Part shown: positions 3,001-61,814 of the stretch, piece after piece
Numbering within the stretch: position 1 is the stretch's first letter
How the letters are laid out: every line of letters begins with the position of its first letter
Virus record (IMG/VR): IMGVR_UViG_3300043410_001892
Coordinates: 308,174 to 372,173 of that record
Direction: 5' to 3' (one strand)
DNA length: 64,000 bases
Notes under the pieces: generated by a model
Told to the model about the DNA's origin: nothing
What the model saw: the letters and a program-made list of their open reading frames with translations, nothing else
The model's database searches: none
Program-made: the position numbers and the translations under genes

Positions 3001-4599
3001 TGCTAATACTTTTTCTAATACAGCTGATCTAAGGTTGTTTCCAGACCCAGTACCTATAATTCGTACTCCAGATCGCAATCCAGGGCTTAAATTAAAGTAG
3101 TATAGATTTTCTCGAGGATTAACCGGTGTAGTTACTAATGAAACATTTTCTTGAGGAAATACGGATTTTGTAAAGTTATCAATGTATGTCCCATCAGTAA
3201 GGAATGCGTCAGACGTATCTAATATTACTGAATTGTTAGTACCTAATGCCACTGTGAATAATTTTGAATATCCATTTGTATTGTTTCTAAGTCTAATAGT
3301 GCTACCAGTTGGAAATGGTATTACGATTTGATTTTCAAAATATACAGTTTTAACTAATACTGCAGATGTGCCATATGTTAAAATATCAGAGTCGAATGCA
3401 TACCAAATACTTGTATTTGGATTTATAGTTATAAGATCAACTGATTGGCCAGTTATTGCAAAATTCTTATCACCAGTAAGAGCTTGATGTGTAAATGTTT
3501 CTAATTTGCTGTAGCTTGCTAATAAACGAGAATCTGCAAAGAATTGAGAAGTAGAAAATTTTACACCTCTAAAGTTTGGCAAATTTTCAGATGCAAATAA
3601 GTTCTCACGGGCCTTAGTAAGATTAGAAGGAACACCTTTACTTAACATTTCTGACTGCACTACAGATTTTGGATATACTTCCATAGTAACATTTACTAAT
3701 CTCAACGCTCCAGTATTTGTAGTAGGAAACCCGTCAACTACATCAAAAGTAATGCTTGCAACTGATGCTTCTCTAATTTGTACAATTGCACCAAACCCGG
3801 TTGTATCGTATGATATTTTAATTTTTTGATCTTTCTTATATCTTATTGATCCATTTTGAGAATTATCAAAGTATAACGTCTGTGTATTAACTACAGTCCG
3901 AGGTGATGATGTTAAAATTGCAGATTCTTTAATATACCAATCAACAACATTATACCCTAGATTGTACTGTCCGTTAATATATATTGGATTGTCAATTTCA
4001 GTTGATACGTTGTCAAACCAAGATAATTTAGGTGATACTTCTGGTAAGGTTGTAGTATTAAAGTTGTAATACCAACGTTTTGCAGATGTTGCTCCAGGTG
4101 CTGGAAAAGTAGTTGGTGCAGACGGCACAGGTGTACCTGGAAATAAATCAGTAGTAACGTTTACTAATCTAAGTCCGGCGGTATTAACTATTGGAAATCC
4201 ATCAAAGATATCAAAGGTAATACTTATTGGTGTAGATTCTTTAATAGTTACGATCTTGGAAAAACCGTCTCCAAGATATGTTAGTTTAATATCAGTATTT
4301 TTTCGATATAAGATCGCCCCAACTTTATCGGTATTATTAAGATATAAGGTTTGAGTTATAACCGGAGTTCTTATTGTTTTTGTAAGAATATTGCTTACAC
4401 TGCTAAGATACCAATCTGCTACATTATATGCAACATTGTATTGGCTACTTATGTAAGTAGGCGAATCAGTTTCAACTGGACTGTTTAAATATGTTGATAA
4501 TTTTCCAAAAACAGATGGAAGATCACATGAAACAAAGCTATCGGTTAATTGAAATGAGTTTGGTGCACCAGGTGCTGGAAAAATAATATTAGTAGTCAT
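1..4599 (-). CDS. Very large (>1530 aa) repeat-containing putative virion structural protein, 3' end outside window
   Basis: ATG at 4599 (MTTNIIFPAPGAPNSFQ...). Frame read open at both ends and in sampled internal parts, running off position 1, so absent from the ORF track. Recurrent modules ..WY..//..SITF..(V)DGFP..//..PRENL(Y/F).. ; late-promoter-like TAAATA just upstream. Confidence 0.85.
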   Translation of the reverse strand, partial: MTTNIIFPAPGAPNSFQLTDSFVSCDLPSVFGKLSTYLNSPVETDSPTYISSQYNVAYNVADWYLSSVSNILTKTIRTPVITQTLYLNNTDKVGAILYRKNTDIKLTYLGDGFSKIVTIKESTPISITFDIFDGFPIVNTAGLRLVNVTTDLFPGTPVPSAPTTFPAPGATSAKRWYYNFNTTTLPEVSPKLSWFDNVSTEIDNPIYINGQYNLGYNVVDWYIKESAILTSSPRTVVNTQTLYFDNSQNGSIRYKKDQKIKISYDTTGFGAIVQIREASVASITFDVVDGFPTTNTGALRLVNVTMEVYPKSVVQSEMLSKGVPSNLTKARENLFASENLPNFRGVKFSTSQFFADSRLLASYSKLETFTHQALTGDKNFAITGQSVDLITINPNTSIWYAFDSDILTYGTSAVLVKTVYFENQIVIPFPTGSTIRLRNNTNGYSKLFTVALGTNNSVILDTSDAFLTDGTYIDNFTKSVFPQENVSLVTTPVNPRENLYYFNLSPGLRSGVRIIGTGSGNNLRSAVLEKVLAKLVADKTVISMSPMTKYKPGASQVFEAPVSSGLSKSITKLKTVSADISYSQLSKQVIFAKSLPVLPLIGNFIKLTGSVNGIAPNPLSSLSSMSKQLITVRSEPTQLLVSKLMKLTVTNTHVFATPASALTKIKLGVRGNNIALSTETVTKLKHKLATLPELKIDQLPPINYTGIGVYATTDYYIDQNSILINGAASRPCDYFFYSKVVPQKYSAKTYKEVYGVLSNINAGNSSDATPVVIYAKMNPLGIPTGISTSPTANSKFTVPSDPVKSYALSNFNNVVEGNPVTVTGQSAVYDIVSWYIYENQIVASTTPTPGLTQTLTFNSPTQGLVKLFYENNYVKIEQLSSGFSATVQLISTTPFSITFAKVDGFPSSISGMTIVSVSNPVYSRSLVASQLMQYGVVIQTTLPRENLYATETLPNLRGFNYSIGNRAAGVTNVSQPNRLEVFQDTKITGDFKLLATRQTSDLITATNNILQWYTFENNVITTTSAPATIKTLFFDTQLAVPYPNGTTVKISSDLMSITATVITGTVNSISFLQPATILPMDNLYIERITASVYLQSQVVTTVIPTNSRENLYYSMLRPLNKGSAGLGSSSVTPANGILINSKISLRDTLAKMSSDSVKLKGIIVKAEPSAIKVSSTTLSVKVASDRTTVTSGNLAKQIVKLTSDRKYASTERATSITFPTVIWYTDQITVSGISGHSTNPSVAAWYEFDLNIILPTALASNYITLYTGRTLYNGGDKIRVVQLYTGYNQIFNVVSSTVNSVTIEAPREFPPISGMYFTWGRSTTQTDVTYTDPNSVPLIKQVKQFQGQLVDAPVSGTLAKQLVKLTNDNNQIKQGNVAKQLLALTSVKIGNYQSKELSTITSATAPIWYDELIYITGRTGFSTNPSIANVYAFEKNTFVSTTIVSDYITLYFNPSNIRNKTNRVRIRNTATSYDKVFIPVSSTYDSITIQDPGNFPAITGLYFVWGQDVTTTSVSYTANDSINIVKLFKASNI

Positions 4600-7794: not shown

Positions 7795-9009
7795 TCACTG
7801 ATTATAAAGTAAAGTTAGACTAAAATTAGTACCTGCTCCTGCCACTACGCTAACCGTAAGTCGATCATTTGTATTGATACCAATTTGTAAACCAGTGTAC
7901 ATTGCTGTAATATTTGGTGCGTCAATTTGAAAAAATTGAACTAAGTCACCGCTTTTATATAATCCAACCATTATTTGTGAGGTTGTCATATTACCAACTG
8001 TTAGCTGTACAGATGTTATTAGTGAAGTAGCAACTGGAACAAAAATTGCACTTCCTAAAAGTGGTGCATGGAATTCTCCTAATATATTAAATGTTTTAAT
8101 TATAACAGGTGGGACATTATTTAAATCTTCGTAACTACCAGTTTTTGCTACAGTTGATAATCCTAAATTTGTAAATGCATTTAATTTTTCAGTATCTGAC
8201 AGATTTTGATTATTAACATCATATCTTATTGATGCAGTTACAAATTCAGTATATTCTAATCCATCTGCAGTAGAATTAACTCTTAAAACATTACCAGCTG
8301 CCCCGATTGGTAATGTAGTCATCTCATTATTAAGAGAACCAATTAGTATATCATTGGGATTAATAGATGAAAGACCAGTACCACCGTATTGTGGAGTTAT
8401 AACAGTACCATTCCACTCACCGGTAGTAATTGTTCCTAATGTAGTGATACTTGTTTGACCAACGTATGTGCTATCGATATCAATATTGGTAGTTGATACT
8501 ACAATTCGTCCATCAGTTCCTGCTTGTATTATCCCAGGAGGTCCTTGTTCACCTGTTGCACCGGTTGCACCAGTTGGTCCTTGTACACCAGGTACACCTT
8601 GTGGACCAGTATCACCTGTATCACCTTTAGGTCCTTGTAATCCGGTTTCTCCTTGTGGTCCAGTTAAACCAATAGGACCTTGATCACCAGTATCTCCCTT
8701 AGGTCCCTGTAAACCAGTTTCTCCTTGTGGTCCAGCAGGTCCAGTTTCACCTGTATCACCCTTAGGTCCTTGTAATCCAGTTTCACCTTGTGGTCCAGCA
8801 GGTCCAGTTTCACCTTGTGGACCAGTTGCACCCGGAATACCTTGTCCACCTGTTGAATATGGTAAATCATTCCATCGATGAATTCCATCACCAATCTTAA
8901 ATTTACCACCTTGATCTAATTCAATTGCTAATTCACCTTCAGCAAGAAGTGGATTATAATAAGTCCAGTCTGCCGCGAGTCCTCGCCGTAGTTGTAGCTG
9001 ATTAGCCAT
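7795..9009 (-). CDS. Collagen-like fibre protein with Mtd-like N-terminal domain
   Basis: N-term LRRG..ADW....LAEGE.AIELD..KFKIGDG..WNDLPY, then about 35 Gly-X-Y triplets. Confidence 0.8.
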
Positions 9010-11056
9010 TTATTCCTCCAAAATCAAAGGTTACTAATCCGCCGTATACTGAATTAGGTCCACCTCCGTCTATCATAAATTGTGATAAATCACCTTTAGG
9101 TCCTTGTGGTCCAATCGGACCAATATCACCTGTGTCGCCTTTAGGTCCTTGCGGTCCTACAGCTCCGTCTATTCCTTGTCTTCCGTCAACACCGGCAGGT
9201 CCTTGTTCTCCCTGAGGTCCTTGTGGACCAATTGGTCCAGTTTCACCTTGAATTCCTTGAATTCCTTGTGGACCAGTTTCGCCTTGAATTCCTTGAATTC
9301 CTTGTGGACCTTGATCTCCGGTATCGCCTTTAGGTCCCTGTATGCCTTGAATCCCTTGTGGACCAGTTAAACCAATTTCTCCTTTAAGACCTTGTTCGCC
9401 TTGTGGTCCTTGTGGCCCAATCGGTCCAGTTAAACCAGTTAAACCACGTGGTCCTTGTTCTCCCTGAAGGCCTTGAGGTCCTTGGTCGCCTTGTGGACCA
9501 ATTAATCCTGCAGGTCCTTGTGGTCCTTGTGGCCCAGTTAAACCATCTGCTCCCTGTGGTCCTTGTGGTCCAACAGCACCAGTTAAACCAGTAGCGCCAG
9601 TTAGTCCGCGTTCTCCCTGAAGTCCCTGCGGACCTTGCGGTCCTTGTGGACCAGTTAAACCAGTAGCACCTGTTGCACCAGTTAACCCCTGTGGTCCTTG
9701 AGCACCTTGTTCGCCTTGAGGACCAGTAGCACCAGTTAAACCACGTAGACCTTGCGGTCCTGTTGGTCCAATTTCTCCTTGTGGTCCTTGTATACCTTGA
9801 GCACCAGTTAATCCAGTTAAACCACGTTCCCCTTGTATACCTTGATCGCCTTGTGGTCCTTGTGGTCCAACAGCACCAGTAGCACCGGTAGCACCAGTTA
9901 GGCCACGCTCTCCTTGTATACCTTGCGGTCCTTGTGGTCCAACAGGACCAGTTGCGCCAGTTGCTCCTGTAGCGCCAGTTGCACCTGGTAATCCGTCTGC
10001 ACCTGCAGGGCCTTGTGGTCCAACTGCGCCAGTAGCACCAGTTAAACCAGTTAGTCCGCGTTCGCCTTGTAATCCCTGCGGTCCTTGTTCGCCTTGTGGT
10101 CCGGCAGCACCAGTTAAACCAGTTAGTCCGCGTTCTCCCTGCGGTCCTTGTGGTCCAATTGGTCCTTGTTCACCAGTAGCACCAGTTAAGCCGCGCGGTC
10201 CAGTCGGTCCTGCCGGTCCGGTATCGCCTTGTATACCTTGTGGACCAGTTGCGCCAGTAGCACCAGTTAAACCAGTAGCGCCAGTTAACCCCTGTGGTCC
10301 TTGTAATCCCTGTGGTCCTTGTGGGCCAACAGCACCAGTTGCACCAGTAGCGCCAGTAGCGCCTGGTAATCCGTCTGCACCTGCAGGTCCTTGTGGTCCA
10401 GTTGGTCCAGTTAAGCCAGTTAACCCACGTGGTCCTTGATCACCGGTATCACCTTTAGGTCCAGTTGGTCCAGTTAAACCAGTAGCACCAGTAGCACCAG
10501 TTAGTCCTCGTTCCCCTTGTATACCTTGAGGTCCGTCAGGTCCAGTTGGTCCGGTTAAACCAGTTAAACCACGTGGTCCTTGATCGCCTTGAGGTCCTTG
10601 TGGACCAGTTAAGCCTTGAGGTCCTTGTGGTCCAGCTGGGCCAGCTGGCCCTTGTGGTCCTGTAGTATATTCGACGCTAATAGTTCCGTCTGCGCTAACA
10701 GTAATACCAGAACCAATTTTAACACCGCCGAGGATAGATGAAGTAGCAATAGGTGTAGCAGATGCAGATCGCCATGTATTTGCATATCGGATATTTAGAT
10801 TGCCAGTTGTGGTATTCCACCACAAAGTACCTGGATCTAAAGAAGATGGAGGAGTGCTTGAAACGTAGATTGTTGCGTTGCCGGAACCCCCTCCACCTCC
10901 AGATCCTCCAAAGGTGAGTGGAATACCGCCAAGCGTTATACCGTCAGATAATCGTAAATCGCCGACATCTTCGTTATAAAATATAATACCTTTTTCGCCG
11001 ACAAAGTCGTCGGCATCAATTTTAACACGTCCTGATCTAATCTTTTGAGTGGTCAT
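9002..11056 (-). CDS. Collagen triple-helix repeat fibre protein
   Basis: About 175 consecutive Gly-X-Y triplets ([12 protein letters not shown]). Confidence 0.9.
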
Positions 11057-11106
11057 ACATGTATTTATTGTAGATTATCAAAAGATTAAGCAGGGTGTAT
11101 AAGTAA

Positions 11107-11340
11107 CTAGCGACGTCGTTTAGCTAGAATCGCTTCTTTTTCTAATTTTTTACGGTAACGTGCTTTTGCAGCGCCTGCTTCACGTTTACGCTTTGTAGTG
11201 GGTTTTTCGTAGAATTCTTTCTTACGTAGAGTTTCTAATTTATTTGAATCTTCAACTTTGCGTTTAAATCTACGCAATGCTTGTGTAATATTTTCATTTT
11301 CTCTTACTGAAACTTTAACTTTATTCTGCAGTGTTATCAT
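11107..11340 (-). CDS. rpsU: 30S ribosomal protein bS21
   Basis: [16 protein letters not shown].....[21 protein letters not shown] matches the bS21 signature; start reassigned to ATG 11340. Confidence 0.92.
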
Positions 11341-11728
11341 TATCTTCCTCATTGTTAATTTGATCAACTATCCAATCTAAATCAAAAATTCTATTTTTAG
11401 AAATTAAATTGTATGGTGTTAGTTCGTCGTTAGTTATATAATATGATTCTGGGTGTGTTAGCATAAAACTAATAAACAGTTTAGTAGTTGGATCACAATT
11501 ATCAACATCAATAATTATTACAGCTACTTGATGCATTACACTCAATAACCATTCAATATCTGGTTCGTCAGTATCGTAAATGAAGACATTCATGTCTTCA
11601 TCAGATTGACTAATAATAGTTTGAAAATTTTCTAAAACATTATTTGATGGACGTACTAATAAATAACCAACATCTAAATTAAAAAATTTATCTGGAGGAG
11701 TTATAACTGTAACTTTTCCTAAATTCAT
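11321..11728 (-). CDS. Hypothetical phage protein
   Basis: 135-aa ORF overlapping the rpsU start. Confidence 0.7.
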
Positions 11729-11736
11729 GTGACCTT

Positions 11737-12264
11737 CTATGTAGTGATTAGTTTTGTTTTGTATTTAGTGTAAAAACCTTTCACTGTTAAAGAAACCTTT
11801 TGAACACCGGTAATTCCAATTCTTTTAGCAGCTTCTTTTGAAAGATCAATGATTCTGCCTTTTAAAAATGGTCCGCGGTCATTGATTCTAACTAGTACTG
11901 ATTTATGATTTACATCATTAGTTACTTCAACAACTGTGCCAAATGGTAATGTCTTATGTGCTGCAGTTAGTTCTTTTGGACTAAAATATTCTCCGTTTGC
12001 AGTTTTTGGTCTGCGACGATATCTTGGTCCTGATTCATAACCATACCAGCTTGCATAACCATTCATGCTATCTCCAGATGCTAACGGATTTCTGTGTTTA
12101 TGTTTTCTGTGTTTTTTGAATAATGCAATTTTATGTTTCATTTTTGCATTGTGTTTAACTTGTTCGACATGTTTTTCGTTGACATGTTTTTGTGACGCAT
12201 CTACTGGAAATGCGGTTGAAATTAATGAGAGGGCAAGAAGCCCTATTGGTAGTGAATTTTTCAT
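11737..12264 (-). CDS. rlpA: RlpA-family septal ring lytic transglycosylase (DPBB) with N-terminal signal peptide
   Basis: G.ASWYG...TANGE.F....[16 protein letters not shown]...[19 protein letters not shown]; start [12 protein letters not shown] with AAAGGAG RBS. Confidence 0.9.
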
Positions 12265-12269
12265 ATTTT

Positions 12270-12575
12270 CTCCTTTCACTTGGTGTGCTCTGTCACAGCC
12301 GCACATTACATTAAGGGAGTAAACTGCACGAGGTTCTTCGAACCCATTTGTTCGTGACGTCTTCTCCATCAGCCACAACATTAAAACTGCAAATGTTGTA
12401 CCTTTGGCAAGCCTGGCTTCCCGAATTTCGCGGGTTTCTACTTTGGCCAAGACTCGCAGGATTGATTACATCTCTCAATCCAACTATCTTAGTTTCTCTC
12501 GAAACATATAATATATAGTATAAATTGATAAAATACAATTTAAAATATGGTTTTTTATCTAATTAACTTATACTT
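12270..12575 (-). ncRNA. Candidate structured 5' leader RNA of rlpA
   Basis: GC-elevated leader with several stems: GGATTGA/TCAATCC, GCGAGTCTTGGC/GCCAGGCTTGC enclosing CCCG/CGGG, ACAACATT/AATGTTGT, CACGA/TCGTG enclosing GGTTC/GAACC. Confidence 0.5.
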
Positions 12576-12581
12576 TTACAT

Positions 12582-12610
12582 ATTATACATAAAAATTGCT
12601 AAGTTGTCAA
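12582..12610 (-). promoter_or_regulatory. Consensus sigma70 promoter for leader + rlpA
   Basis: TTGACA-17bp-TATAAT on the minus strand. Confidence 0.8.
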
Positions 12611-12647
12611 GTGAAAACTACTAAATATAAGATAATAGGAGTTTTTA

Positions 12648-13550
12648 ATGAAAATACATGAATTAATGGAAGCACGTTTGCAAGATTCACTCCCTCATCT
12701 TCTTACAAGCGTAGCATCTTTAGAAAAACTATATACAATTACCATGCCAGGCATTCTTGCTGATTTTACAAGAAAAATGCGTGATACTGGTGCTGCTACT
12801 GATAGTTTTGGTCGTGGTATGGAAAATAGAGATATTAGAACTGTTACGATGCAACTTGGTGCTGCAAAATCAAAATGGTTTACTGAAAATTATTTTTCAT
12901 ATTCTAAGAGTAGAAGAGAGTTATCAGGGACTGGGCTAAAAACTGCATTAGTGGAATTATCAAAATTACCTGAATTACAAAGCATTCCTGCTATAAAAAC
13001 ATTAGCACATTTAGATGTTAACATAAATCCAAATAATAAATCTAAAGAAGCTGACATTATGTCATATGGTGAGTTAATGGGTGAGATTGAATTAGAGTTA
13101 CCAGAAATTTTAGAAAAAATTGGTAAAATTATTGGAAATCCGGATTTAACTGCTAGAGGAACAAGGTTAGATACTACTATCGGATCTTGGTATAAAAAGA
13201 AAGATGCTACTGTTCCAAAAGTTCATCAGGATGCAGACAAAATAGTAAAACGTGGTGATGCATATCATACTCATCGTAAAGATAGTAATTTAGGTAAAGG
13301 TGACATCATGTCGCCAGCTGAAAAACCTGGCAAATCTGGCAATCATAGTCAAAATATGAGTGCTGCTCAACAAGCAATTAATCAAGGTTTTGAATTACTT
13401 AAAAAGCATGGTATTAGAGATCATGAATTACATGCAATTAGACAAAAAGTTCAAAAAAGTGATAATCAACTAATGGCCTTACTGCAAGTATTTCAAGAGT
13501 TTGGAATCAACCCAAATGCGTTAATGGAAGCTTGGTTAAGAACTTATTAA
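12648..13550 (+). CDS. Hypothetical protein with capsid-targeting-like N-terminus
   Basis: 300 aa, MKIHELMEA start, AGGAG RBS, CTAAATA late-type promoter. Confidence 0.75.
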   Translation: MKIHELMEARLQDSLPHLLTSVASLEKLYTITMPGILADFTRKMRDTGAATDSFGRGMENRDIRTVTMQLGAAKSKWFTENYFSYSKSRRELSGTGLKTALVELSKLPELQSIPAIKTLAHLDVNINPNNKSKEADIMSYGELMGEIELELPEILEKIGKIIGNPDLTARGTRLDTTIGSWYKKKDATVPKVHQDADKIVKRGDAYHTHRKDSNLGKGDIMSPAEKPGKSGNHSQNMSAAQQAINQGFELLKKHGIRDHELHAIRQKVQKSDNQLMALLQVFQEFGINPNALMEAWLRTY

Positions 13551-13551
13551 G

Positions 13552-13578
13552 AAAAAAGGGCTAATTAGCCCTTTTTTT
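13552..13578. terminator. Bidirectional terminator
   Basis: AAAAAAGGGCTAATTAGCCCTTTTTTT between convergent genes. Confidence 0.85.
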
Positions 13579-13651
13579 AACGATTACAAATATACATAGT
13601 GACTTCAAAGCCAAACCGTATATCATTATAACTTGGTGTTTCCCATTTCAT
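13577..13651 (-). CDS. pqqA: Pyrroloquinoline quinone precursor peptide PqqA
   Basis: Translates to MKWETPSYNDIRFGFEVTMYICNR (24 aa), with the W..P...D.R.GFEVTMY..NR PqqA signature and E-x3-Y; AAGGAG RBS; terminator directly downstream. Confidence 0.92.
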   Translation of the reverse strand: MKWETPSYNDIRFGFEVTMYICNR

Positions 13652-13664
13652 AACTTAATCTCCT

Positions 13665-13931
13665 TTATCCGCCTGCAAATACGTTACCTGAACCGGTTGC
13701 AGGATGTGCGCATGATGCTTTATCACCCTCGCGACATACTCCAATATTGTTAGCAAACACTGTTCCGCTATGGTCAACCATTACAGGTGACGCATGTGGT
13801 GCATCACCGTGACCTTGAATGTGAGCACCTTGTACTGTAATAGGTTTGTTATTAACAAATACAGTAGGTGCTAACGCTTCAATGATTGTGCCACCTGCGG
13901 TATCTTGATTTACTCTCGAAACCCCAGGCAT
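13665..13931 (-). CDS. PAAR-domain baseplate spike tip protein (gp5.4-like)
   Basis: TVFVNNKP...H..HG..PH...S.TVFAN..GVCREGD.ASCAH..TGSGNVF. Confidence 0.85.
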   Translation of the reverse strand: MPGVSRVNQDTAGGTIIEALAPTVFVNNKPITVQGAHIQGHGDAPHASPVMVDHSGTVFANNIGVCREGDKASCAHPATGSGNVFAGG

Positions 13932-14218
13932 TAGGTTATAATACCAGTTGTTGCTTTAGTATAAGAACTTGCTGATTCTTTTTCAGTTGGTTCCATTACT
14001 ACTACAGTAGATGCAGCAATTTTAACTACTTTATCAGGATCAACTGTAAACAAGTATGGTGCCATTCCAATACCTGATTGTGTATTAGCTAACACACGAG
14101 GTTTTGAAACTTTAATATATTTGTCTGTTTCTTCAACCAATGAGGCTAATAGTTCTTCACCAGAAGTTAATTTAATTGTAACTACATCACCTACTGAAAC
14201 GCCTTTATCTATAATCAT
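13931..14218 (-). CDS. Conserved hypothetical phage protein (possible Sm-like fold)
   Basis: GDVVTIKLTSGEEL.A pattern. Confidence 0.6.
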   Translation of the reverse strand: MIIDKGVSVGDVVTIKLTSGEELLASLVEETDKYIKVSKPRVLANTQSGIGMAPYLFTVDPDKVVKIAASTVVVMEPTEKESASSYTKATTGIIT

Positions 14219-14448
14219 ACTTTACCTTTTAAATAATTTTGTAATTCTGAAAAACCACCTACATATTGACCATCAATTTTAATTTGTGGTACTGAACGTG
14301 CAGCTGGTACTTCTTCTAATAAATGTTCTTTTGTCCATCCGCCATCTGACAGATTTCTTTCTTCAAACTTAATGTTTTTCATTAGTAACAAGTTCTTAGC
14401 TTGTGTACATTGCGGGCACTGGTCCTTGCTCCATATAATTGCTGTCAT
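14215..14448 (-). CDS. Glutaredoxin
   Basis: CPQC, RSVPQI..DG.YVGGF; clustered with nrdAB. Confidence 0.9.
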   Translation of the reverse strand: MTAIIWSKDQCPQCTQAKNLLLMKNIKFEERNLSDGGWTKEHLLEEVPAARSVPQIKIDGQYVGGFSELQNYLKGKV

Positions 14449-14993
14449 TAAAAACTATCCATAATCTTTTGTAATCTATGCCATTCATCCATTTCTTTTT
14501 CTTTGTTAGCATTGCGGTAGTTTATGTATTCATCTGCGTACGGCGAAGCCGGCATTGGTTCTAAATTAGGTTTTGGATTTCCTGTAATACTGCAAACTGG
14601 TGCGTTTATCTTAGTTAACATATAATTACGAATTTTATCTGCAATAGTTTTTGATCGCGGTTTTTCAAAAAACTCAGCAACTGCACATAAAAACTTTACA
14701 GTACGGCATTCGTATTTTTGTTCAACTGCTTTTACGTGTTCGCTGATAATTTTCATATCATGTACTATTGCTCGATAATCCTCATCTGTTGATGTACGCA
14801 GTCTAACCAGTCGATCTTGACCTTCTTTTAATGTTATTTTTAACACTCTTATTCTTTCAGCCGGATTAATATACGAGTTATACCGGCTATTTGGATCAGC
14901 TTTGTCTGATTGACTTGGATTTTCAAGATCAGATATCTCTTGTTTTACTTTTTCAATTCTATCTTCTAATTTTTTTATTAAATGTGTTGTCAT
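14448..14993 (-). CDS. Hypothetical protein
   Basis: 181-aa ORF coupled to grx. Confidence 0.65.
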   Translation of the reverse strand: MTTHLIKKLEDRIEKVKQEISDLENPSQSDKADPNSRYNSYINPAERIRVLKITLKEGQDRLVRLRTSTDEDYRAIVHDMKIISEHVKAVEQKYECRTVKFLCAVAEFFEKPRSKTIADKIRNYMLTKINAPVCSITGNPKPNLEPMPASPYADEYINYRNANKEKEMDEWHRLQKIMDSF

Positions 14994-15128
14994 TTTAAAA
15001 AGTCCTTATGTGGGTTAGACCAATCGATCAATGATATCTTTTTCATCATATCATCTATTGCTTGTTGTTGGCTATTGATCGCTGCTTTAGTTAGTTCAGT
15101 GTACCTAGATGCTCTAGCGCACCTATAC

Positions 15129-15323
15129 TTACGGCTTTTCTTCAAAAATCTGTCTGAGCGCATTCTTCATGGCCTCCTGTTCTTTTTCAGTCCATAAACC
15201 AGCTGATGGAGTTTTTCCTTCTTTAACCATTGCGCAAGGGCATACAGGATCATTGCCCTGCGGTCCCATGCATGCACAAATCTTAAGATCTTTGTATTCG
15301 TTATAAGGCTGGTAGTTCGTCAT
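15129..15323 (-). CDS. Small Cys-rich hypothetical protein
   Basis: CACMGP...P.CPC.M motif; overlaps the nrdB end. Confidence 0.55.
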   Translation of the reverse strand: MTNYQPYNEYKDLKICACMGPQGNDPVCPCAMVKEGKTPSAGLWTEKEQEAMKNALRQIFEEKP

Positions 15324-16395
15324 AATTTAATTCATCCGACATTACACCTACTACATAGTTGACACTTTCAGATTCTTGTAAAGCAGTTTGCTTTTTACTC
15401 GGATCACTATGCTTGTTAAACCATGGAATAGGAGTTGATTTAGGTGCATGTTCACGATACTTAATGCCAACTTCTTTTAAAGCGTGTGCAGCAGTATAGT
15501 CAACAAATTCTTTTAAGATGTTAGCGTTAAGTCCAATTACTGGTCCTTTTAAGAATAAGTAATCTGCCCATTCTTTTTCTTCGCGAATAACATCTAAGTA
15601 CATATTATACACTAATTCCTCGCATTCTGCTTTAATTTCGGCAAAACGCGGGTCATCTTTTATTACCAAATTAATCATGTAAGCAGTCCACTCTTTATGC
15701 AATAATTCATCTTGTAATATAAGTGCAATAATGTTACCATTACCGATGAACAGTTTATTTTCAACCATTGCTAAACTGGTAGCAAACGACACCATAAATC
15801 TTAATGATTCTAATGCGTAGCTGGCATGTAGCGCAAGCCAGATAGCTTTAATGTGTTCTCTTTCAGGTACATAAATGCTAAGTTCGCATTTGCAATTGAT
15901 TATATGTAATTCATTATAGTATCTACCAACACTACTTGCCATATCAACAATTGGTTTAGTATCATGGATAGTGTTAAATATCTCTTTTGGGACATTATAG
16001 ATATTACGAATAATATGACTATAACTACGACTATGAATATTTGATTCAAAAAAGCCCCAGTTAAGCATTAGTAGTTCTGCTTCAGGTACACTAACTACAG
16101 GTGTAAACACTTGTGTAGGACCTCGTCCTTGTAAACTGTCTAATGCAGTTTGTCTTAATAAGTTACTAGTGAAAATATGTTTAACTGCATCACTAGCATC
16201 TTTAAAATCATTAGCGTCTTTGCTTAATGAGATTTCTTCTGGAGTCCAAAAGAAACCTCTAGCAGTTTGCTCATATTTTTGAATTTTTGGATAGCGAACT
16301 TCTTCAAATCTTTGAATGGTAACTGTCCCGTCTAGAAACAATTTTCTAGACAGGTAGTTAGTTTGTTCGCTTAGATTATATTGTTCATCACTCAT
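15301..16395 (-). CDS. nrdB: Ribonucleotide reductase class Ia beta subunit
   Basis: FFWTPEEI, LDSLQGR, E..HSRSY, LE..RF.VSFA, DE.LH, QE.E...Y. Confidence 0.95.
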   Translation of the reverse strand: MSDEQYNLSEQTNYLSRKLFLDGTVTIQRFEEVRYPKIQKYEQTARGFFWTPEEISLSKDANDFKDASDAVKHIFTSNLLRQTALDSLQGRGPTQVFTPVVSVPEAELLMLNWGFFESNIHSRSYSHIIRNIYNVPKEIFNTIHDTKPIVDMASSVGRYYNELHIINCKCELSIYVPEREHIKAIWLALHASYALESLRFMVSFATSLAMVENKLFIGNGNIIALILQDELLHKEWTAYMINLVIKDDPRFAEIKAECEELVYNMYLDVIREEKEWADYLFLKGPVIGLNANILKEFVDYTAAHALKEVGIKYREHAPKSTPIPWFNKHSDPSKKQTALQESESVNYVVGVMSDELNYDELPAL

Positions 16396-16397
16396 TA

Positions 16398-16655
16398 TTA
16401 CACCGATTCGTTAGGTACAACTGTAAATTCAGGAGGAGGAATTTCATCTCCTGAATAATTTATACATAACCCTTGTTCTTTATCGATATATACACTTAAA
16501 ACATCATCTGCACTTAACGCGGCTAAAACCATAGGTTTAGCTTCTTCTTCAATTATAAAATTATCAGGAACTCCCCATAATTTTAATTTTTCATTAAGGC
16601 GTTCATTTAACAGTTCGTCGTTAGTGAATTCTTTAATTGCAACTTCGTTAGTCAT
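16398..16655 (-). CDS. Hypothetical protein
   Basis: 85-aa ORF in operon. Confidence 0.6.
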   Translation of the reverse strand: MTNEVAIKEFTNDELLNERLNEKLKLWGVPDNFIIEEEAKPMVLAALSADDVLSVYIDKEQGLCINYSGDEIPPPEFTVVPNESV

Positions 16656-16839
16656 TTATAATCCTTATTGTACTTGTTTCATCTAATGCATACCACGCAC
16701 TTTCAAAATATTTCGTTATGTCATTTAATGTTTCTTCTGGCATACGCATTACCCATTCGTTTGTTTCAGCATCATGTTTAAGTGGTAATTCGATTTTTAA
16801 ATTATGCCGCATTGATACTACTAATTTTTTATCTTTCAT
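16648..16839 (-). CDS. Hypothetical protein
   Basis: Start MKDKKLVV overlapping the SOD stop. Confidence 0.55.
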   Translation of the reverse strand: MKDKKLVVSMRHNLKIELPLKHDAETNEWVMRMPEETLNDITKYFESAWYALDETSTIRIIND

Positions 16840-17384
16840 AACGTTTTGTTTACCTGTTCCCAGTTTATTATTTTCCATTGATTTTCTAAATACTTTTGTT
16901 TATCTGATTGATAGTCTAGTGCCCATGCATGTTCCCACCAGTCAACTAATAATACAATGTCTTTTTTAATAGCATGGTTAGTTATAGTTTTAATTTGTCC
17001 ATTTTTAGCAAGATAGACCCAACCACTTCCTTGTATGCCCATTGCTACTTTTAAAAACTCTTCTTTGAATTTATCAAAGGTTTTATAATGGGTTTCAATG
17101 AGCTCAAGTGCCTTGCCAACTGGCTTGTTTAGTTTACCAGTTGACTCTTGATATTGCTGGAACAAAATGTTGTGTAAAAATACACCTGCTTCGTTAAACA
17201 CCGGATCACCTTCACCTGCATTATACCGTTTTGCGTATGTTTTAGCAAGATGTTCGTAATGGTAATCTAATGTTTCTTTTGATATAGCAGGACTTAACTC
17301 ATTCATCCCGTATGGCAGGGCATCTATTTTTAAAGATGCCGGTCTACCTTCAGTTATAAATTGTTTAATGAAGCTATAACTCAT
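16836..17384 (-). CDS. sod: Fe/Mn superoxide dismutase
   Basis: LPY...L.P.IS.ETL.YHY..H, HN..F, GSGW..L, D.WEHA; ATGA-coupled to the nrdA stop. Confidence 0.9.
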   Translation of the reverse strand: MSYSFIKQFITEGRPASLKIDALPYGMNELSPAISKETLDYHYEHLAKTYAKRYNAGEGDPVFNEAGVFLHNILFQQYQESTGKLNKPVGKALELIETHYKTFDKFKEEFLKVAMGIQGSGWVYLAKNGQIKTITNHAIKKDIVLLVDWWEHAWALDYQSDKQKYLENQWKIINWEQVNKTL

Positions 17385-19696
17385 AGCTTGCAAGCCTCGC
17401 ATGATTCATCTTCTTCTTCAATAATTGCACTAGGTAAATCAATTTCAACTTCTTCTTTGCTACCAGTTTTGTCAATTAAACTATAGTAGAATGTCTTAAT
17501 ACCCCAATAGTGCCCTAACATTAAGTTTTTAGCAATTAGTGTAGTTGGTATCTTTCTACCTGGAAAGTGTTTTGGAGAATAGAATGTATCAGTACTAATT
17601 GATTGATCAATGTATGCAGCTAATACAGCCGCAGTTTTCAAATAACCAACACAATCAGTTTGTTCCCACATAAGTTGATATTTGTTTTTCAATTTATGAT
17701 ACTCAGGAACTACTTGTGTAAGTGAACCAGCTTTTGATTCTTTAGTTTGAATAAGCTGCATAGGCATTGCAATACCATTTGTAGAATTGATCACAACACT
17801 TGAACTTTCAACTGGAGCAATAGCACCTACTGTAGCATTTCTTACACCATATTGTTTCATTTCAGTACGTAGTGTTTCCCATGGTAATTCTGGAGTAAAG
17901 TCAGTTAAGTCATTAGCACCGTCTGCACGTAATTCCCATGGAAAGATACCTTGGCCATAACGTGTTTCTGCACTATGTCTGCAAGGACCACGTTCTTTAG
18001 CTAATTCAACTGACATTTCAGTTAAGTAGAAAGTTTGGTGTTCAATCCAGCTTTTAACTTCTGCCAATGCATCAGCATCTCCGTATTTAAAGTTACGTTT
18101 TGCATGCCAATATGCTAAGTTAGTAATACCAATACCTAACGGTCGTATTTCTTGATTGCTTTCATAACTATGTACAGACAAGAAATCTTGATAATCTAAG
18201 ATATTGTTTAAGCTGCGATGTAAAATACGGCAAGCTCTGCGCATATCTTCTGGATTACGGAATGCTCCCCAGTTCATAGACCCCAACGTACACAACGCTA
18301 TGCGTCCACTTGGATCATCCAATCGTTTAAATGCTTTTGTGGGGAGCAATATTTCTTGACATAAGTTACTTTGGTAAATTGTGTGAAAGTACGGATCAAA
18401 TGGTCCTTGCTTGATTACATTGTCAATGAACACTAAGTAAATACGGCCAGTGTCAGTGCGTTCTTTTAAGAGACCACCTTTGAACACCTCCTCGGCTGAC
18501 ATAGTTTTCTTCCGTAGCGTTTTATCTTGCTCATACTGGGTGTAGAGCTTTTCGAACAATAATGTATCAGTGTAAAACGCTTCATATAAGTCTGGTACTT
18601 CATTAGGATCAAAAAATGTTATGTTTTCTTTGTTTTTGAACCTACGCCAAAAGAATGCGTTTAATACAACGCTGTAATCTAAATGACGCACTCGTGTTTC
18701 ATCTGTTCCTTGATTGTTTTTAAGTACGATCAAGTCATCAAATTGATAATGCCAAATTGGAAATGTTATAGTTGCGCTTGCATTGCGTATGCCGCCTTGC
18801 GAGCAACTGCGTAAATCTCCAAACCATTTCTTTAAAAATGGAATCATTCCAGTATGCATGATTTCGCCACCGCGAATTGGGGAGCCCAAGGGGCGTAGTC
18901 GACCAATTTCTAATCCAATCCCCGCACGTTTACTGGCATATTTTGCCATCATTTCACCGCTTGCAAAAATAGAGTCAAGATCATCATCACTACGAATAAG
19001 TACGCAGGAGCTAAACTGTTTAGTTGGTGTGCCAAGCCCAGCAAGAACGGGTGTAGCAAGAGTAAATAAGCCATCGGATGCAGCATTATAATATTCCTTA
19101 ATATATTTCATTCTCGCAGTAGCAGGTTCTTCTTTATGGAAGACTGTTGCAGCAGCAATCATATATCTTACTTGTGGAGTTTCGTAAATATCTTTAGTAG
19201 CACGATTGCGTACTAAGTATTTTTCGATAAGTTGTTCAATAGCAGCATATGAGTAGGTTTCATCTTTTGAATGATCAAGCATGTCATTCATTTTATTCCA
19301 TTCTTCAACAGAATACCAATCAAGTAATTCTGAAGTGTATAGTCCAACTTCAATATTCTTTTTAACTATTGTATATAGATGTGGTGGTTCATATTGACCA
19401 TAGACATCTTTTCGTAGCATGGACAACCTTTGTTTACCTGCTACATATTGATAATTTGTATGACCTACATCAGGATTAGCGTCAACATCAATTAAGTTAA
19501 CAATTGCCCTTAATGTAATTTCGTCAATTTCTTGTGTAGTAATATTATCATAAAATTGTGGTTGGCTTTTGATTTCGATCATTGATTGACTAACATCTGC
19601 AATTCCACTGCAAATCTTTGCAATTTGAGCTTGCCATTTTTCGATTGTAAGATCGGCACAAATTCCGTTGCGTTTAATAACTTTTATTTTATTCAT
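17381..19696 (-). CDS. nrdA: Ribonucleotide reductase class Ia alpha subunit (with ATP cone)
   Basis: VIKRNG ATP cone, TPVLAG, FSSCVL, SCSQGGIR, SNLCQEI, APVESSS, KT.YY, C-terminal CEACKL. Confidence 0.96.
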   Translation of the reverse strand: MNKIKVIKRNGICADLTIEKWQAQIAKICSGIADVSQSMIEIKSQPQFYDNITTQEIDEITLRAIVNLIDVDANPDVGHTNYQYVAGKQRLSMLRKDVYGQYEPPHLYTIVKKNIEVGLYTSELLDWYSVEEWNKMNDMLDHSKDETYSYAAIEQLIEKYLVRNRATKDIYETPQVRYMIAAATVFHKEEPATARMKYIKEYYNAASDGLFTLATPVLAGLGTPTKQFSSCVLIRSDDDLDSIFASGEMMAKYASKRAGIGLEIGRLRPLGSPIRGGEIMHTGMIPFLKKWFGDLRSCSQGGIRNASATITFPIWHYQFDDLIVLKNNQGTDETRVRHLDYSVVLNAFFWRRFKNKENITFFDPNEVPDLYEAFYTDTLLFEKLYTQYEQDKTLRKKTMSAEEVFKGGLLKERTDTGRIYLVFIDNVIKQGPFDPYFHTIYQSNLCQEILLPTKAFKRLDDPSGRIALCTLGSMNWGAFRNPEDMRRACRILHRSLNNILDYQDFLSVHSYESNQEIRPLGIGITNLAYWHAKRNFKYGDADALAEVKSWIEHQTFYLTEMSVELAKERGPCRHSAETRYGQGIFPWELRADGANDLTDFTPELPWETLRTEMKQYGVRNATVGAIAPVESSSVVINSTNGIAMPMQLIQTKESKAGSLTQVVPEYHKLKNKYQLMWEQTDCVGYLKTAAVLAAYIDQSISTDTFYSPKHFPGRKIPTTLIAKNLMLGHYWGIKTFYYSLIDKTGSKEEVEIDLPSAIIEEEDESCEACKL

Positions 19697-19872
19697 ATAA
19701 TTTCACTTCTGGTTAGGATAGTATTTAGTTGGTACTAAACCGATAAAATACAGATTAGATTCCGCCTAAAGACCAGTAAAATCAATAAGATTTAATCATT
19801 TAAAATCAAGTTTATCTCTTATCATTTTTGTAATTATACTTGATTTTTTCTAATAAGTCTATCGATTTGGCA

Positions 19873-21459
19873 TTATGATATAGCTGAATATTTGTATGTA
19901 AATATACCCGAATCAGCTGTATATGTATTAAGGTAATTTAATGATATATTGTTATTTAGAACAGAAGCACTAAATTCCAATAATGTACTATTACTAGTTG
20001 TTCCAGTACAAGTGTAATCATCAACAACAGATAACGTTAATGATGTAGGATTTGGCGGAACATATATTGTAATAGTTCCTTGTCTGTTAAGATGATTACT
20101 TTTATAGGAGTAATCGATTGTGTATGTAACATCCCATGATCCAATTGAACCTCCTTCTGAATCAGTTGGAATTGGGAATCTAACTAATGATGTAGAAACC
20201 CCTACTACTGAAATAGTAGTATTAACTGTGTTTGTGCTGTACTCAACATGTCCTACTGCTACTGGGATAAATCTTGGTAAGGACAAAGATGTACTCGCCA
20301 TTGCAATAGCTCTTGATGATCTTAAATTTACAATTGAATTACCAACATCGTTAAAGTAAATTTGTGGATAATACGGCATTGTGTCTAAACCACCGACATG
20401 CTTCATTGATACATTGGCAATTGAGTTGTTAGATCCGTTATCTATAAACACACCTTGTTTAGTAATATCAGTAAACGTAGCATTTGTAATCTGTGTATTA
20501 AATGGTCCATTTGTACTTAAACCATTTCCTAAATTAACTGCAAAGTTACATATTGAAACTGTTAAATTAGTAAATGTGTTATTTGATGCACCAACATCAC
20601 CGTAAACTCCTGAATGATAGTTATTAATGGTAATATTGTTGAATACGTTATTAGATGAATTTTTTAGGTAAACTCCATTATGATCATTAAAGAAACCTGC
20701 AGTCCAACTTCCTGACATTTTTAAATCTTCAAATTTACTATCAGATACATTTGTAGCATTTATACCAGCATTAGTACCATTTGGTGATTTAAGCGTCATC
20801 CCTTGAATTGTAATAAATCTTGGGTTATTTGGTGATTCAAGTGAATCAACATCTGATACAAATCTAAATACGTCACTAGTATGTATATTTTGAATGATTG
20901 TTTTATCTATTCCTGCACCTATGATTGTTGTATAACTTGGTAATACAAGTGCATTAGTAATTTTATAAATACCAGCTGGCAAACGAAGAGTTACACGAGT
21001 TGAAATTCCATCGGCAGTGTTAAGGAATGATTTATTAGCAATTGGATTTGAAAACAATTGGTTAATTGCACGTTGTAGTAATGGAGTGTTATCAACTAAC
21101 CCATCCCCAACTGCACCAAAGTCAGCAGCCGATATTGAGTCATCAAGTTTTGATTGTATTGTTCTTGAAATAGGAAATGCTGCAGACGGACCAGTTACGA
21201 TTGGTGATCCTGCTGTTGCTCTATATGTATAAGGTAATAGAGAAATTAAGTTACCAGTAGTAGATGATATATCGCGTGAGGTTAATATTTTAGTTTTACC
21301 TATATAAGGTGCACCTTCTGCAATAGATCCGTTGCCAATGAACAACTCTTGTGTATCAATTGCCCATCCCATTTCGCCAGACGCTAGTTGCGGAAATCCA
21401 GTTTCGCTATTAGCTTTACCTCGACGTATTTGAATTTTTGAAACTTGGTAAACTGCCAT
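19873..21459 (-). CDS. Tail spike-like protein with right-handed beta-helix (pectate lyase 3-like)
   Basis: Mtd-like N-term (IQIRRG...PQLASGE.GWAID..LFIG); DFGAVGDG..DNT..LQRAI; PAGIYKI; Asn-rich beta-helix. Confidence 0.8.
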   Translation of the reverse strand: MAVYQVSKIQIRRGKANSETGFPQLASGEMGWAIDTQELFIGNGSIAEGAPYIGKTKILTSRDISSTTGNLISLLPYTYRATAGSPIVTGPSAAFPISRTIQSKLDDSISAADFGAVGDGLVDNTPLLQRAINQLFSNPIANKSFLNTADGISTRVTLRLPAGIYKITNALVLPSYTTIIGAGIDKTIIQNIHTSDVFRFVSDVDSLESPNNPRFITIQGMTLKSPNGTNAGINATNVSDSKFEDLKMSGSWTAGFFNDHNGVYLKNSSNNVFNNITINNYHSGVYGDVGASNNTFTNLTVSICNFAVNLGNGLSTNGPFNTQITNATFTDITKQGVFIDNGSNNSIANVSMKHVGGLDTMPYYPQIYFNDVGNSIVNLRSSRAIAMASTSLSLPRFIPVAVGHVEYSTNTVNTTISVVGVSTSLVRFPIPTDSEGGSIGSWDVTYTIDYSYKSNHLNRQGTITIYVPPNPTSLTLSVVDDYTCTGTTSNSTLLEFSASVLNNNISLNYLNTYTADSGIFTYKYSAIS

Positions 21460-40984: not shown

Positions 40985-41039
40985 GCTGCTCGCGATCTTG
41001 GCGGATCCAGCAGCATTAACGTCGTTAAGGGACATCAAC
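40985..41039 (+). promoter_or_regulatory. Hairpin leader of homing endonuclease, downstream of a late-type TAAATA
   Basis: GCTGCT/AGCAGC stem enclosing GATC/GATC, then a small hairpin over the AAGGGA RBS. Confidence 0.45.
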
Positions 41040-61786: not shown

Positions 61787-61814
61787 CAGCCACACTAAGT
61801 TGAAGAGGTATACG

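What the first reader, a model, noticed from the sequence alone, without database searches (positions are those of the whole stretch)
13577..13651. Phage-encoded PqqA (PQQ cofactor precursor peptide), missed by ORF calling
Seen: a 24-aa ORF MKWETPSYNDIRFGFEVTMYICNR with a strong RBS, the last gene of the nrdA-sod-nrdB-grx-PAAR run before a terminator. Known: PqqA supplies the Glu and Tyr (E-x3-Y) that PqqB-E convert to PQQ, the cofactor of methanol and glucose dehydrogenases, and it is consumed stoichiometrically. No pqqB-E occur in this window. Inference: an auxiliary gene feeding host PQQ synthesis to sustain methanol oxidation during infection, pointing to a methylo- or methanotrophic host.
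Basis: partly seen in the sequence, partly recalled or inferred. Interest (0 to 1): 0.85.

Follow-up and report, generated by a model that had tools for sequence, protein, structure and literature searches.

The report
Orphan pqqA gene in freshwater jumbo phage
A large freshwater phage carries a real 24-codon copy of pqqA, the peptide that bacteria consume to make the cofactor PQQ needed to oxidise methanol; it most likely tops up that supply in a methane-oxidising host, but phage pqqA has been reported before, so this is a new example rather than a new idea.

Summary
Window 13577-13651 (-) encodes MKWETPSYNDIRFGFEVTMYICNR, with an AAGGAG ribosome-binding site 8 nt upstream and a strong hairpin terminator just after it. 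It passes both curated PqqA models by a wide margin (Pfam 44.4 bits against a cutoff of 21.1; NCBIfam equivalog 49.8 against 20). The window is a T4-like phage found on IMG/VR contigs of 172 and 372 kb from freshwater. It has no pqqB-E. Five other contigs of the lineage carry pqqA in the same slot; three lack it, so it is an accessory gene. Its closest bacterial counterparts are Methylococcales (type I methanotroph) PqqAs (21-22 of 24 aa, up to 71 of 75 nt), not the Methylophilaceae type. Orphan pqqA is widespread in viruses: at least 120 IMG/VR contigs, none with pqqB-E nearby and all under purifying selection, plus ten isolated Methylophilales phage genomes where it is unannotated. The best explanation is an auxiliary gene supplying the consumable PQQ precursor to host PqqB-E. 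This is inferred; no expression was seen. Viral pqqA was already published (Lake Baikal 2020; reservoir sediments 2026), so this is a new member of a known kind, of moderate interest.

The parts
13577..13651 (-). pqqA: 24-codon ORF plus stop, MKWETPSYNDIRFGFEVTMYICNR. Glu16 and Tyr20 are the E-x3-Y pair that becomes PQQ; Trp3 and Pro6 form the leader motif.
   Evidence: conserved in relatives
13660..13665 (-). Ribosome-binding site AAGGAG, 8 nt before the ATG. It overlaps the PAAR stop codon, so only 13 nt separate the two genes and there is no room for a separate intergenic promoter.
   Evidence: read; invariant in alignment A1
13552..13577 (.). Bidirectional intrinsic terminator hairpin (GGGCU/AGCCC stem extended by A/U pairs), shared with the convergent ORF 12648-13550.
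   Evidence: -13.6 kcal/mol, z = -4.4; conserved in L250, L251 and also in L252, which lacks pqqA
13665..13931 (-). PAAR-motif protein (88 aa), probably the tail-spike tip of a T4-like phage. It is variable in the lineage: 248 aa in L252-L254, and skipped in a minority strain of the source sample.
   Evidence: PF05488, phrog_281
13931..14218 (-). Conserved phage protein of unknown function (phrog_527), 80-85% identical in relatives.
14215..14448 (-). Glutaredoxin
   Evidence: PF00462, E = 1.5e-12
15301..16395 (-). Ribonucleotide reductase small subunit (nrdB)
16836..17402 (-). Fe/Mn superoxide dismutase
17381..19696 (-). Ribonucleotide reductase large subunit (nrdA, class Ia with ATP cone)
12648..13550 (+). 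Convergent 300-aa ORF of unknown function. It evolves fast (45-48% identity in relatives) and was used as the lineage marker.

Best explanation
This is a functional stand-alone pqqA carried as an auxiliary metabolic gene by a large T4-like freshwater phage. The host is most likely a type I methanotroph of the order Methylococcales. The gene is translated from its own strong ribosome-binding site as the last cistron of the transcript that also covers the PAAR gene. The 24-aa peptide would be bound by the host's PqqD, cross-linked between Glu16 and Tyr20 by the host radical-SAM enzyme PqqE, then trimmed and oxidised by host protease, PqqB and PqqC to give PQQ. One peptide is destroyed per PQQ molecule while the enzymes act catalytically, so pqqA is the only pathway component a phage needs to carry. 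This keeps PQQ synthesis going, and with it PQQ-dependent methanol dehydrogenase (the second step of methane oxidation and a main source of reducing power), once host transcription declines. Shown: gene identity, phage context, absence of pqqB-E in the window, conservation and selection, and methanotroph-type sequence. Inferred: expression, acceptance by host enzymes, physiological benefit, and host identity.
For: Identity: curated HMM scores are more than twice the cutoffs, and E-x3-Y and W-x-x-P are intact.
Phage context: tail fibres, PAAR, nrd genes and a homing endonuclease; a structural protein 37-40% identical to T4-like cyanomyoviruses; 100% match to IMG/VR contigs of 372,173 and 171,592 bp; freshwater metagenomes.
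Conservation: pqqA with the same RBS and terminator is in the same slot in L250, L251/L299, L267, L303 and L344, although the neighbouring 300-aa protein is only 32-48% identical.
Selection: 109 distinct viral pqqA nucleotide sequences keep Trp, Pro and Asn21 at codons the search pattern did not force, with free synonymous change.
Orphan status is the rule: none of 119 IMG/VR pqqA loci has pqqB-E in the held flanks.
Host type: 28 of 36 bacterial loci with 21/24 identity are named Methylococcales. The bacterial gene with the most similar DNA in the genome collection (L212, 66/75 nt, 34.7% GC) has a PqqB inside the Methylomonas/Methylobacter/Crenothrix clade. A microbial-mat organism has a pqqA 71/75 nt identical.
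Calibration: phage P19250A's PqqA is identical to that of its host clade.
Rationale: in the methanotroph M. trichosporium OB3b an orphan, unannotated pqqA is expressed at about 12,000-14,000 units against 160-370 for pqqB-E (PMC3615186). Methylotrophs keep up to five pqqA copies, and expression of orphan copies tracks PQQ synthesis rate (PMC9851590). A bacterial orphan pqqA (L316) lies inside a moxY / PQQ-dehydrogenase cluster.
Against: There is no evidence of expression: the only metatranscriptome holding any of the locus had no pqqA, just one low-depth 151-nt piece upstream, and no RNA run was listed for the gene. Three lineage members (L252-L254) lack pqqA, so it is dispensable. Only 64 kb of a 172-372 kb genome could be examined, so other pqq or methanol/methane-oxidation genes elsewhere cannot be excluded or used. 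Host assignment rests on a 24-aa peptide plus base composition, and the phage's 35% GC is lower than most Methylococcales loci (41-55%). It is not established that PQQ supply limits anything within the time span of an infection.
Confidence: 0.7

Rival explanations
1. Same molecular route (phage PqqA converted to PQQ by host enzymes), but the benefit is redox or oxidative-stress protection rather than methanol oxidation. PQQ would act as a radical scavenger alongside the co-located superoxide dismutase and glutaredoxin that protect the radical-based ribonucleotide reductase.
For: pqqA ends a same-strand run containing nrdA, sod, nrdB and grx. That PQQ has been described as a reactive-oxygen scavenger in bacteria rests on my own knowledge; it was not checked here.
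Against: A structural PAAR gene lies between grx and pqqA. In other phage lineages pqqA sits in unrelated contexts: beside recombination genes in Venkman, P19250A and MEP301, and beside a tRNA and the baseplate hub in Melnitz. So linkage to sod/grx is not general. The hosts of the isolated pqqA phages found are methylotrophs, which fits the methanol dehydrogenase role.
Confidence: 0.12
2. A selectively neutral passenger: a small piece of host DNA recently captured next to a terminator, not yet lost, with no role in infection.
For: Presence is patchy within the lineage (absent in L252-L254). DNA identity to a bacterial pqqA is very high (71/75 nt). No expression evidence.
Against: The captured piece is exactly the ORF with a perfectly placed RBS and no bacterial flank. 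It is retained in five other diverged contigs of the lineage. Across at least 120 viral contigs and several unrelated phage families the peptide is under clear purifying selection. Repeated independent capture of only this gene is hard to explain without benefit.
Confidence: 0.08
3. The gene is a real and useful pqqA, but the host is not a methanotroph. It would be another PQQ-producing gammaproteobacterium, such as Methylophaga-like methylotrophs, Cycloclasticus/Thiotrichales, or a bacterium using PQQ for glucose or alcohol dehydrogenases.
For: The D-[ILM]-RFGFEVTMYI subtype also occurs in Thiotrichales, Methylohalomonas, unclassified Gammaproteobacteria and a few Burkholderiales. The phage's GC of 35% is lower than most Methylococcales loci.
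Against: Identity falls off outside Methylococcales: Thiotrichales/Methylophaga loci are mostly 17-20 of 24. The N-terminal MKWETPSY and the C-terminal I-x-NR together are the Methylococcales multispecies type. Low-GC members of the Methylomonas/Methylobacter clade exist (L212 34.7%, L197 35.3%).
Confidence: 0.2
4. The phage peptide is a decoy that ties up PqqD/PqqE and shuts down host PQQ synthesis.
For: None directly. It is conceivable because a leader peptide alone can bind PqqD.
Against: Both reacting residues (Glu16, Tyr20) and the whole core RFGFEVTMY are strictly retained in the window and in all 109 distinct viral sequences. A decoy would be free to lose them. P19250A's peptide is identical to its host clade's functional peptide.
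Confidence: 0.03

Closest known systems
Viral PqqA of Lake Baikal viral population VP_266 (Coutinho et al. 2020, Microbiome; PMC7678222)
   Same: A PQQ precursor peptide gene on a freshwater phage contig, interpreted as an auxiliary gene supporting methanol oxidation in a methylotrophic host.
   Different: The Baikal population also encoded a viral methanol dehydrogenase, which was not seen in this window. The PqqA type that dominates viral contigs, and that phage P19250A shares with its host clade, is the Methylophilaceae one. The window's peptide is the Methylococcales (methanotroph) type, on a much larger T4-like genome.
Unannotated pqqA of isolated Methylophilales phages (Melnitz, Venkman, P19250A, MEP301, MEP401/402)
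   Same: Compact 23-24 codon pqqA with its own RBS and no pqqB-E nearby. None is annotated as pqqA, and in Melnitz a CDS is called on the opposite strand.
   Different: A different peptide subtype (E-M-RFGFEVTMYV-MNK), different genome positions and different phage families, so these are independent acquisitions. Their hosts are known Methylophilaceae methylotrophs, not methanotrophs.
Bacterial orphan pqqA copies (for example M. trichosporium OB3b; Hyphomicrobium and Methylovorus with five copies)
   Same: Stand-alone pqqA away from pqqBCDE, very highly expressed, often missed by annotation. At least 39 orphan copies were seen among the bacterial loci fetched here, one inside a moxY/xoxF-like cluster.
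   Different: Those are chromosomal and under host regulation. Here the copy is on a phage and is transcribed with phage genes.
Cyanophage psbA (D1 protein) as the textbook auxiliary metabolic gene
   Same: The same logic: the phage carries only the rapidly consumed component of a host energy-generating system, and relies on the host for the rest (established knowledge; an analogy only).
   Different: Unrelated protein and pathway. D1 is a structural subunit that turns over, whereas PqqA is a sacrificial substrate. psbA expression and benefit have been shown experimentally, and phage pqqA's have not.
pmoC-carrying large freshwater phages of methanotrophs (recalled from the literature, not retrieved here)
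   Same: Large freshwater phages thought to boost methane oxidation by supplying one component of the pathway.
   Different: No pmoC was found among the window ORFs scanned. pqqA acts at the methanol step through the cofactor, not at the methane monooxygenase.

Membership tests
PqqA (Pfam PF08042 / NCBIfam TIGR02107) | Scores above the curated cutoffs of the family models | tested here: met
   44.4 bits vs 21.1; 49.8 bits vs 20, equivalog model, covering 21/21 profile positions
PqqA (Pfam PF08042 / NCBIfam TIGR02107) | Conserved Glu-x-x-x-Tyr pair that is cross-linked and becomes PQQ | tested here: met
   Glu16-Val-Thr-Met-Tyr20; invariant in all relatives and in 109 distinct viral sequences, although this core was part of the search pattern
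PqqA (Pfam PF08042 / NCBIfam TIGR02107) | Very short peptide (about 20-40 aa) with an N-terminal W-x-x-P leader used for PqqD recognition | tested here: met
   24 aa; Trp3 and Pro6 present. Both are invariant at unforced codons in the viral set. Their role in PqqD binding is from established knowledge and was not tested.
PqqA (Pfam PF08042 / NCBIfam TIGR02107) | Located immediately upstream of pqqBCDE | tested here: not met
   No PqqB-E homologue in the window. This is not disqualifying: 57 of 126 bacterial copies fetched had no pqqB within 800 nt downstream, and for at least 39 of these enough downstream sequence was held to check. Orphan copies are documented.
PqqA (Pfam PF08042 / NCBIfam TIGR02107) | Converted to PQQ by PqqD/E/B/C | not testable with these tools
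   Needs biochemistry or complementation
Phage auxiliary metabolic gene | Lies inside a genuine phage genome with phage genes on both sides | tested here: met
   Tail fibres at 7795-11056 and PAAR/nrd genes on either side; IMG/VR contigs of 172 and 372 kb; T4-like structural protein
Phage auxiliary metabolic gene | Host-derived metabolic gene, retained under selection in related phages | tested here: met
   21-22/24 aa and up to 71/75 nt identity to Methylococcales-type genes; present in five other lineage contigs, absent in three; purifying selection across viral copies
Phage auxiliary metabolic gene | Expressed during infection and alters host metabolism | tested here: inconclusive
   No pqqA coverage in the one metatranscriptome available, and no RNA run listed. 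Absence in low-depth assembled contigs proves nothing.

The most novel reading that the evidence does not exclude
Orphan pqqA may be the signature auxiliary gene of phages that infect PQQ-dependent C1 oxidisers, playing the role psbA plays for cyanophages. It would have been captured independently by myo-, sipho- and podovirus lineages, always without pqqB-E. Each copy would track the host clade's own peptide closely enough to serve as a host-prediction marker, and it would be systematically invisible because gene callers skip 24-codon ORFs. On this reading the window is the first case assigned to a phage of gammaproteobacterial methanotrophs, implying viral support of the methanol step of methane oxidation in lakes.
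Probability: 0.45. Interest if true: 0.6.

Novelty: new member of a known kind. Interest (0 to 1): 0.4.

Why it matters
If the phage peptide is used, viruses of methane- and methanol-oxidising bacteria sustain the cofactor supply of methanol dehydrogenase during infection. That bears on how viral infection shapes methane removal in lakes. Practically, the result shows that a widespread auxiliary gene is largely missing from phage annotations. It is absent from ten isolate genomes (Melnitz x4, P19250A, Venkman, MEP301, MEP401/402 and the Manatee Spring virus), and the exact peptides of the window, L250 and Melnitz are missing from 15 billion called proteins. The peptide subtype also appears to report the host clade, which would be a cheap host-prediction marker for methylotroph and methanotroph phages. 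It also gives a clean experimental system: Venkman or Melnitz on OM43 strain H5P1 could test whether supplying only a sacrificial precursor benefits a phage.

Tried and rejected
- Megablast of 9 kb around the gene against GenBank phages found nothing.
- The two 'Acinetobacter phage MD-2021a' tblastn hits were rejected as phage evidence. They are bacterial chromosome contigs with pqqABCDE, fur, ppk and similar genes.
- The promoter/terminator scanner did not report the terminator after pqqA; folding the RNA showed it clearly.
- The T4 late-promoter motif TATAAATA is not enriched and not near pqqA, so transcription timing remains unknown.
- There is no Rfam family at 11000-20000 and no solved structure containing a PqqA-like chain.
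- A second run search restricted to RNA listed nothing.
- Pfam scans of the 230-400 aa ORFs for pmoC or methanol dehydrogenase found none, but only about 40 of roughly 100 window ORFs were scanned against Pfam or PHROGs.
- L280 and L283 (31-32% GC, orphan pqqA) could not be classified as phage or bacterial from their domains.
- A formal dN/dS within the lineage was not attempted, because 24 codons with 3-4 differences are too few.

Full report
**The observation**

The minus-strand ORF at 13577-13651 is present and translates to MKWETPSYNDIRFGFEVTMYICNR. AAGGAG lies 8 nt before the ATG and overlaps the stop codon of the upstream PAAR gene. Only 13 nt separate the two genes.

Directly after the stop codon is a hairpin with an A-run before it and a T-run after it. 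It folds at -13.6 kcal/mol (z = -4.4 against shuffles). It also closes the convergent + strand ORF 12648-13550.

The peptide scores 44.4 bits against Pfam PqqA (cutoff 21.1) and 49.8 bits against the NCBIfam equivalog TIGR02107 (cutoff 20). It has the Glu-x3-Tyr pair (Glu16, Tyr20) and the Trp-x-x-Pro leader. This is not a chance ORF.

**The context**

The surrounding 64 kb is phage:
- collagen-like tail fibres and a PAAR spike-tip protein;
- a GIY-YIG/NUMOD3 homing endonuclease, a lytic transglycosylase, a non-specific endonuclease and a deoxyribonucleotidase;
- a ribosomal protein S21 homologue;
- a 667-aa structural protein 37-40% identical to T4-like cyanomyoviruses.

GC is about 35% and no tRNA is present. 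No GenBank phage is close at the DNA level.

The neighbouring 300-aa ORF is 100% identical on IMG/VR contigs of 372,173 and 171,592 bp. The DNA occurs in freshwater and aquatic metagenomes. So this is a large, possibly jumbo, T4-like freshwater phage.

No PqqB, C, D or E homologue is in the window, using either Acinetobacter or Methylococcaceae queries.

**Conservation in the lineage**

Relatives share the gene order: fibres, S21, the 300-aa ORF, terminator, PAAR region, grx, nrdB, sod, nrdA. nrdA and nrdB are about 90% identical, but the 300-aa ORF is only 32-48% identical.

pqqA with the same RBS and terminator occupies the same slot in L250, L251 (the same contig as L299), L267, L303 and L344. 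The peptides differ only at positions 7, 9, 11 and 22.

In L252-L254 a longer PAAR protein runs straight into the same terminator and pqqA is absent.

In the probable source sample, a minority strain joins 13655 to 13944. It loses the PAAR gene but keeps pqqA.

pqqA is therefore an accessory cassette. It is retained in most but not all members.

**Prevalence in viruses**

- All 119 matches examined are complete 23-31 codon PqqA ORFs.
- None has PqqB-E in the flanks held.
- Among 109 distinct nucleotide sequences, codons the pattern did not constrain are conserved with free synonymous change. Trp and Pro are invariant, and Asn21 is kept in 107 of 109, split AAC 56 to AAT 51. This shows purifying selection.

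tblastn against GenBank phages found pqqA in ten genomes: Melnitz (four isolates), P19250A, Venkman, MEP301, MEP401, MEP402 and a Manatee Spring virus. Each has its own RBS, and none is annotated as pqqA. In Melnitz a hypothetical CDS is called on the opposite strand.

Two 'Acinetobacter phage MD-2021a' hits are mislabelled bacterial contigs with a full pqq operon.

The genomic positions differ between phage families, so the gene was captured several times.

**Which host**

A scan of species-representative bacterial genomes for the D-[ILMF]-RFGFEVTMYI subtype returned mainly Methylococcales. Methylophaga/Thiotrichales and a few others followed.
- Of 36 loci matching the window at 21 of 24 residues, 28 are named Methylococcales. 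Identity falls to 17-20 of 24 in Thiotrichales.
- The Methylococcales multispecies peptide is MKWETPSYTDLRFGFEVTMYIYNR.
- The most similar DNA in the genome collection (66/75 nt) is in L212, a stream MAG at 34.7% GC. Its PqqB falls inside the Methylomonas/Methylobacter/Crenothrix clade (SH-aLRT 95).
- In a microbial-mat metagenome, high-depth contigs match only the ORF and diverge exactly at its ends. They differ at 4 nt and give MKWETPSYNDLRFGFEVTMYIYNR.
- Most metagenome contigs with the nearest peptide types are pqqABCDE operons whose enzymes are 64-91% identical to Methylococcaceae proteins.

As a calibration, phage P19250A's PqqA is identical to the peptide of its host clade, Ca. Methylopumilus / Methylophilaceae. 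I therefore assign the host to Methylococcales with moderate confidence. The phage's low GC and the brevity of the peptide are the main reservations.

**Mechanism**

One PqqA is consumed per PQQ, whereas PqqB-E are catalysts (established knowledge; see also the reviews cited within PMC9851590).
- In the methanotroph M. trichosporium OB3b, pqqA is an orphan gene that the annotators had missed. It is expressed at about 12,000-14,000 units against 160-370 for pqqB-E (PMC3615186).
- A Hyphomicrobium strain has five pqqA copies, and expression of an orphan copy tracks PQQ synthesis rate (PMC9851590).
- A bacterial orphan copy (L316) lies between a MoxY-type sensor kinase and a PQQ-dependent dehydrogenase.

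A phage that needs the host's methanol dehydrogenase to keep working therefore needs to bring only pqqA.

What is not shown: transcription, acceptance of the peptide by host PqqD/E, and any fitness effect. The only metatranscriptome with any signal had one exact 151-nt piece at 14444-14594 and nothing on pqqA. No RNA run was listed for the gene.

**Rivals**

The rivals I considered, scored in their own section, are:
- a role for PQQ in oxidative protection, suggested by linkage to sod and grx, but the linkage is not general;
- a neutral passenger, contradicted by repeated capture and purifying selection;
- a non-methanotroph host;
- an inhibitory decoy, contradicted by strict retention of Glu and Tyr.

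**Novelty**

Viral PqqA was reported from Lake Baikal population VP_266 and interpreted in the same way (PMC7678222). Virus-encoded pqqA, pqqD and pqqE were listed among phosphorus-cycling auxiliary genes in reservoir sediments (PMC13188868). The Melnitz paper mentions PQQ only as a medium supplement.

In the library available I found no paper that notes any of the following:
- pqqA in the isolated methylophages;
- its assignment to a methanotroph phage;
- the scale seen here.

The finding is thus a new member of a known kind. The breadth and the systematic annotation gap are its most useful by-products.

Noticed in passing
window 11107-11367 (-): An 86-aa ORF matches the phage ribosomal protein S21 family (phrog_21469, E = 6e-14) and is 86-90% identical in relatives. 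It is a phage-encoded ribosomal protein next to the tail-fibre genes.
   Followed up: partly
window 61800-62627 (+): A complete shikimate dehydrogenase (N-terminal, NAD-binding and C-terminal domains), an unusual metabolic gene for a phage.
   Followed up: no
window 16836-17402 (-): An Fe/Mn superoxide dismutase sits between nrdA and nrdB and is 88-92% identical in relatives. With the glutaredoxin it forms a redox-protection set around the ribonucleotide reductase.
   Followed up: partly
window 13655-13944; run X1: A minority strain in the probable source sample (contig depth about 34 against 123) joins 13655 to 13944. It skips the PAAR gene while keeping pqqA (with Ile11 changed to Leu). In L252-L254 the PAAR protein is 248 aa instead of 88 aa. 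The spike-tip gene is a hot spot of variation.
   Followed up: partly
L001 (Melnitz-1, MZ577095.1) 3967-4072: The annotated hypothetical CDS Melnitz1EXVC043M_151 lies on the strand opposite a perfect pqqA ORF (MKWTKPVAQEMRFGFEVTMYIMTR) with its own RBS. This is probably a mis-call.
   Followed up: yes
L002 (CAKLQF020000010.1) and CAKLQH020000055.1: GenBank records named 'Acinetobacter phage MD-2021a' carry fur, ppk, entB and a pqqABCDE operon. They look like bacterial chromosome contigs filed as phage.
   Followed up: partly
L316 5076-10131: On a bacterial metagenome contig, an orphan pqqA sits between a MoxY-type sensor kinase and a 602-aa PQQ-dependent dehydrogenase with a XoxJ-like binding protein. 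This ties stand-alone pqqA copies to methanol dehydrogenase clusters.
   Followed up: partly
window 40998-41774 (+): A GIY-YIG/NUMOD3 (SegE-like) homing endonuclease, on the opposite strand to the genes upstream of it.
   Followed up: no
window 34479-35243 (+), 35211-35966 (-), 38380-39189 (-), 39416-39910 (-): A class 3 lipase, a non-specific DNA/RNA endonuclease, an NAD-dependent sugar epimerase/dehydratase and a 5'-3' deoxyribonucleotidase: further host-takeover or metabolic genes.
   Followed up: no
L280 and L283 (metagenome contigs, 31-32% GC): An orphan pqqA of the type seen in this phage lineage (MKWETPTYVDLRFGFEVTMYIYNR), with no pqqB-E and no homologues of the window's neighbours. Nearby genes are an AAA ATPase, a metallophosphoesterase and a CAP-domain protein. 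This could be another phage group or a very low-GC bacterium.
   Followed up: partly
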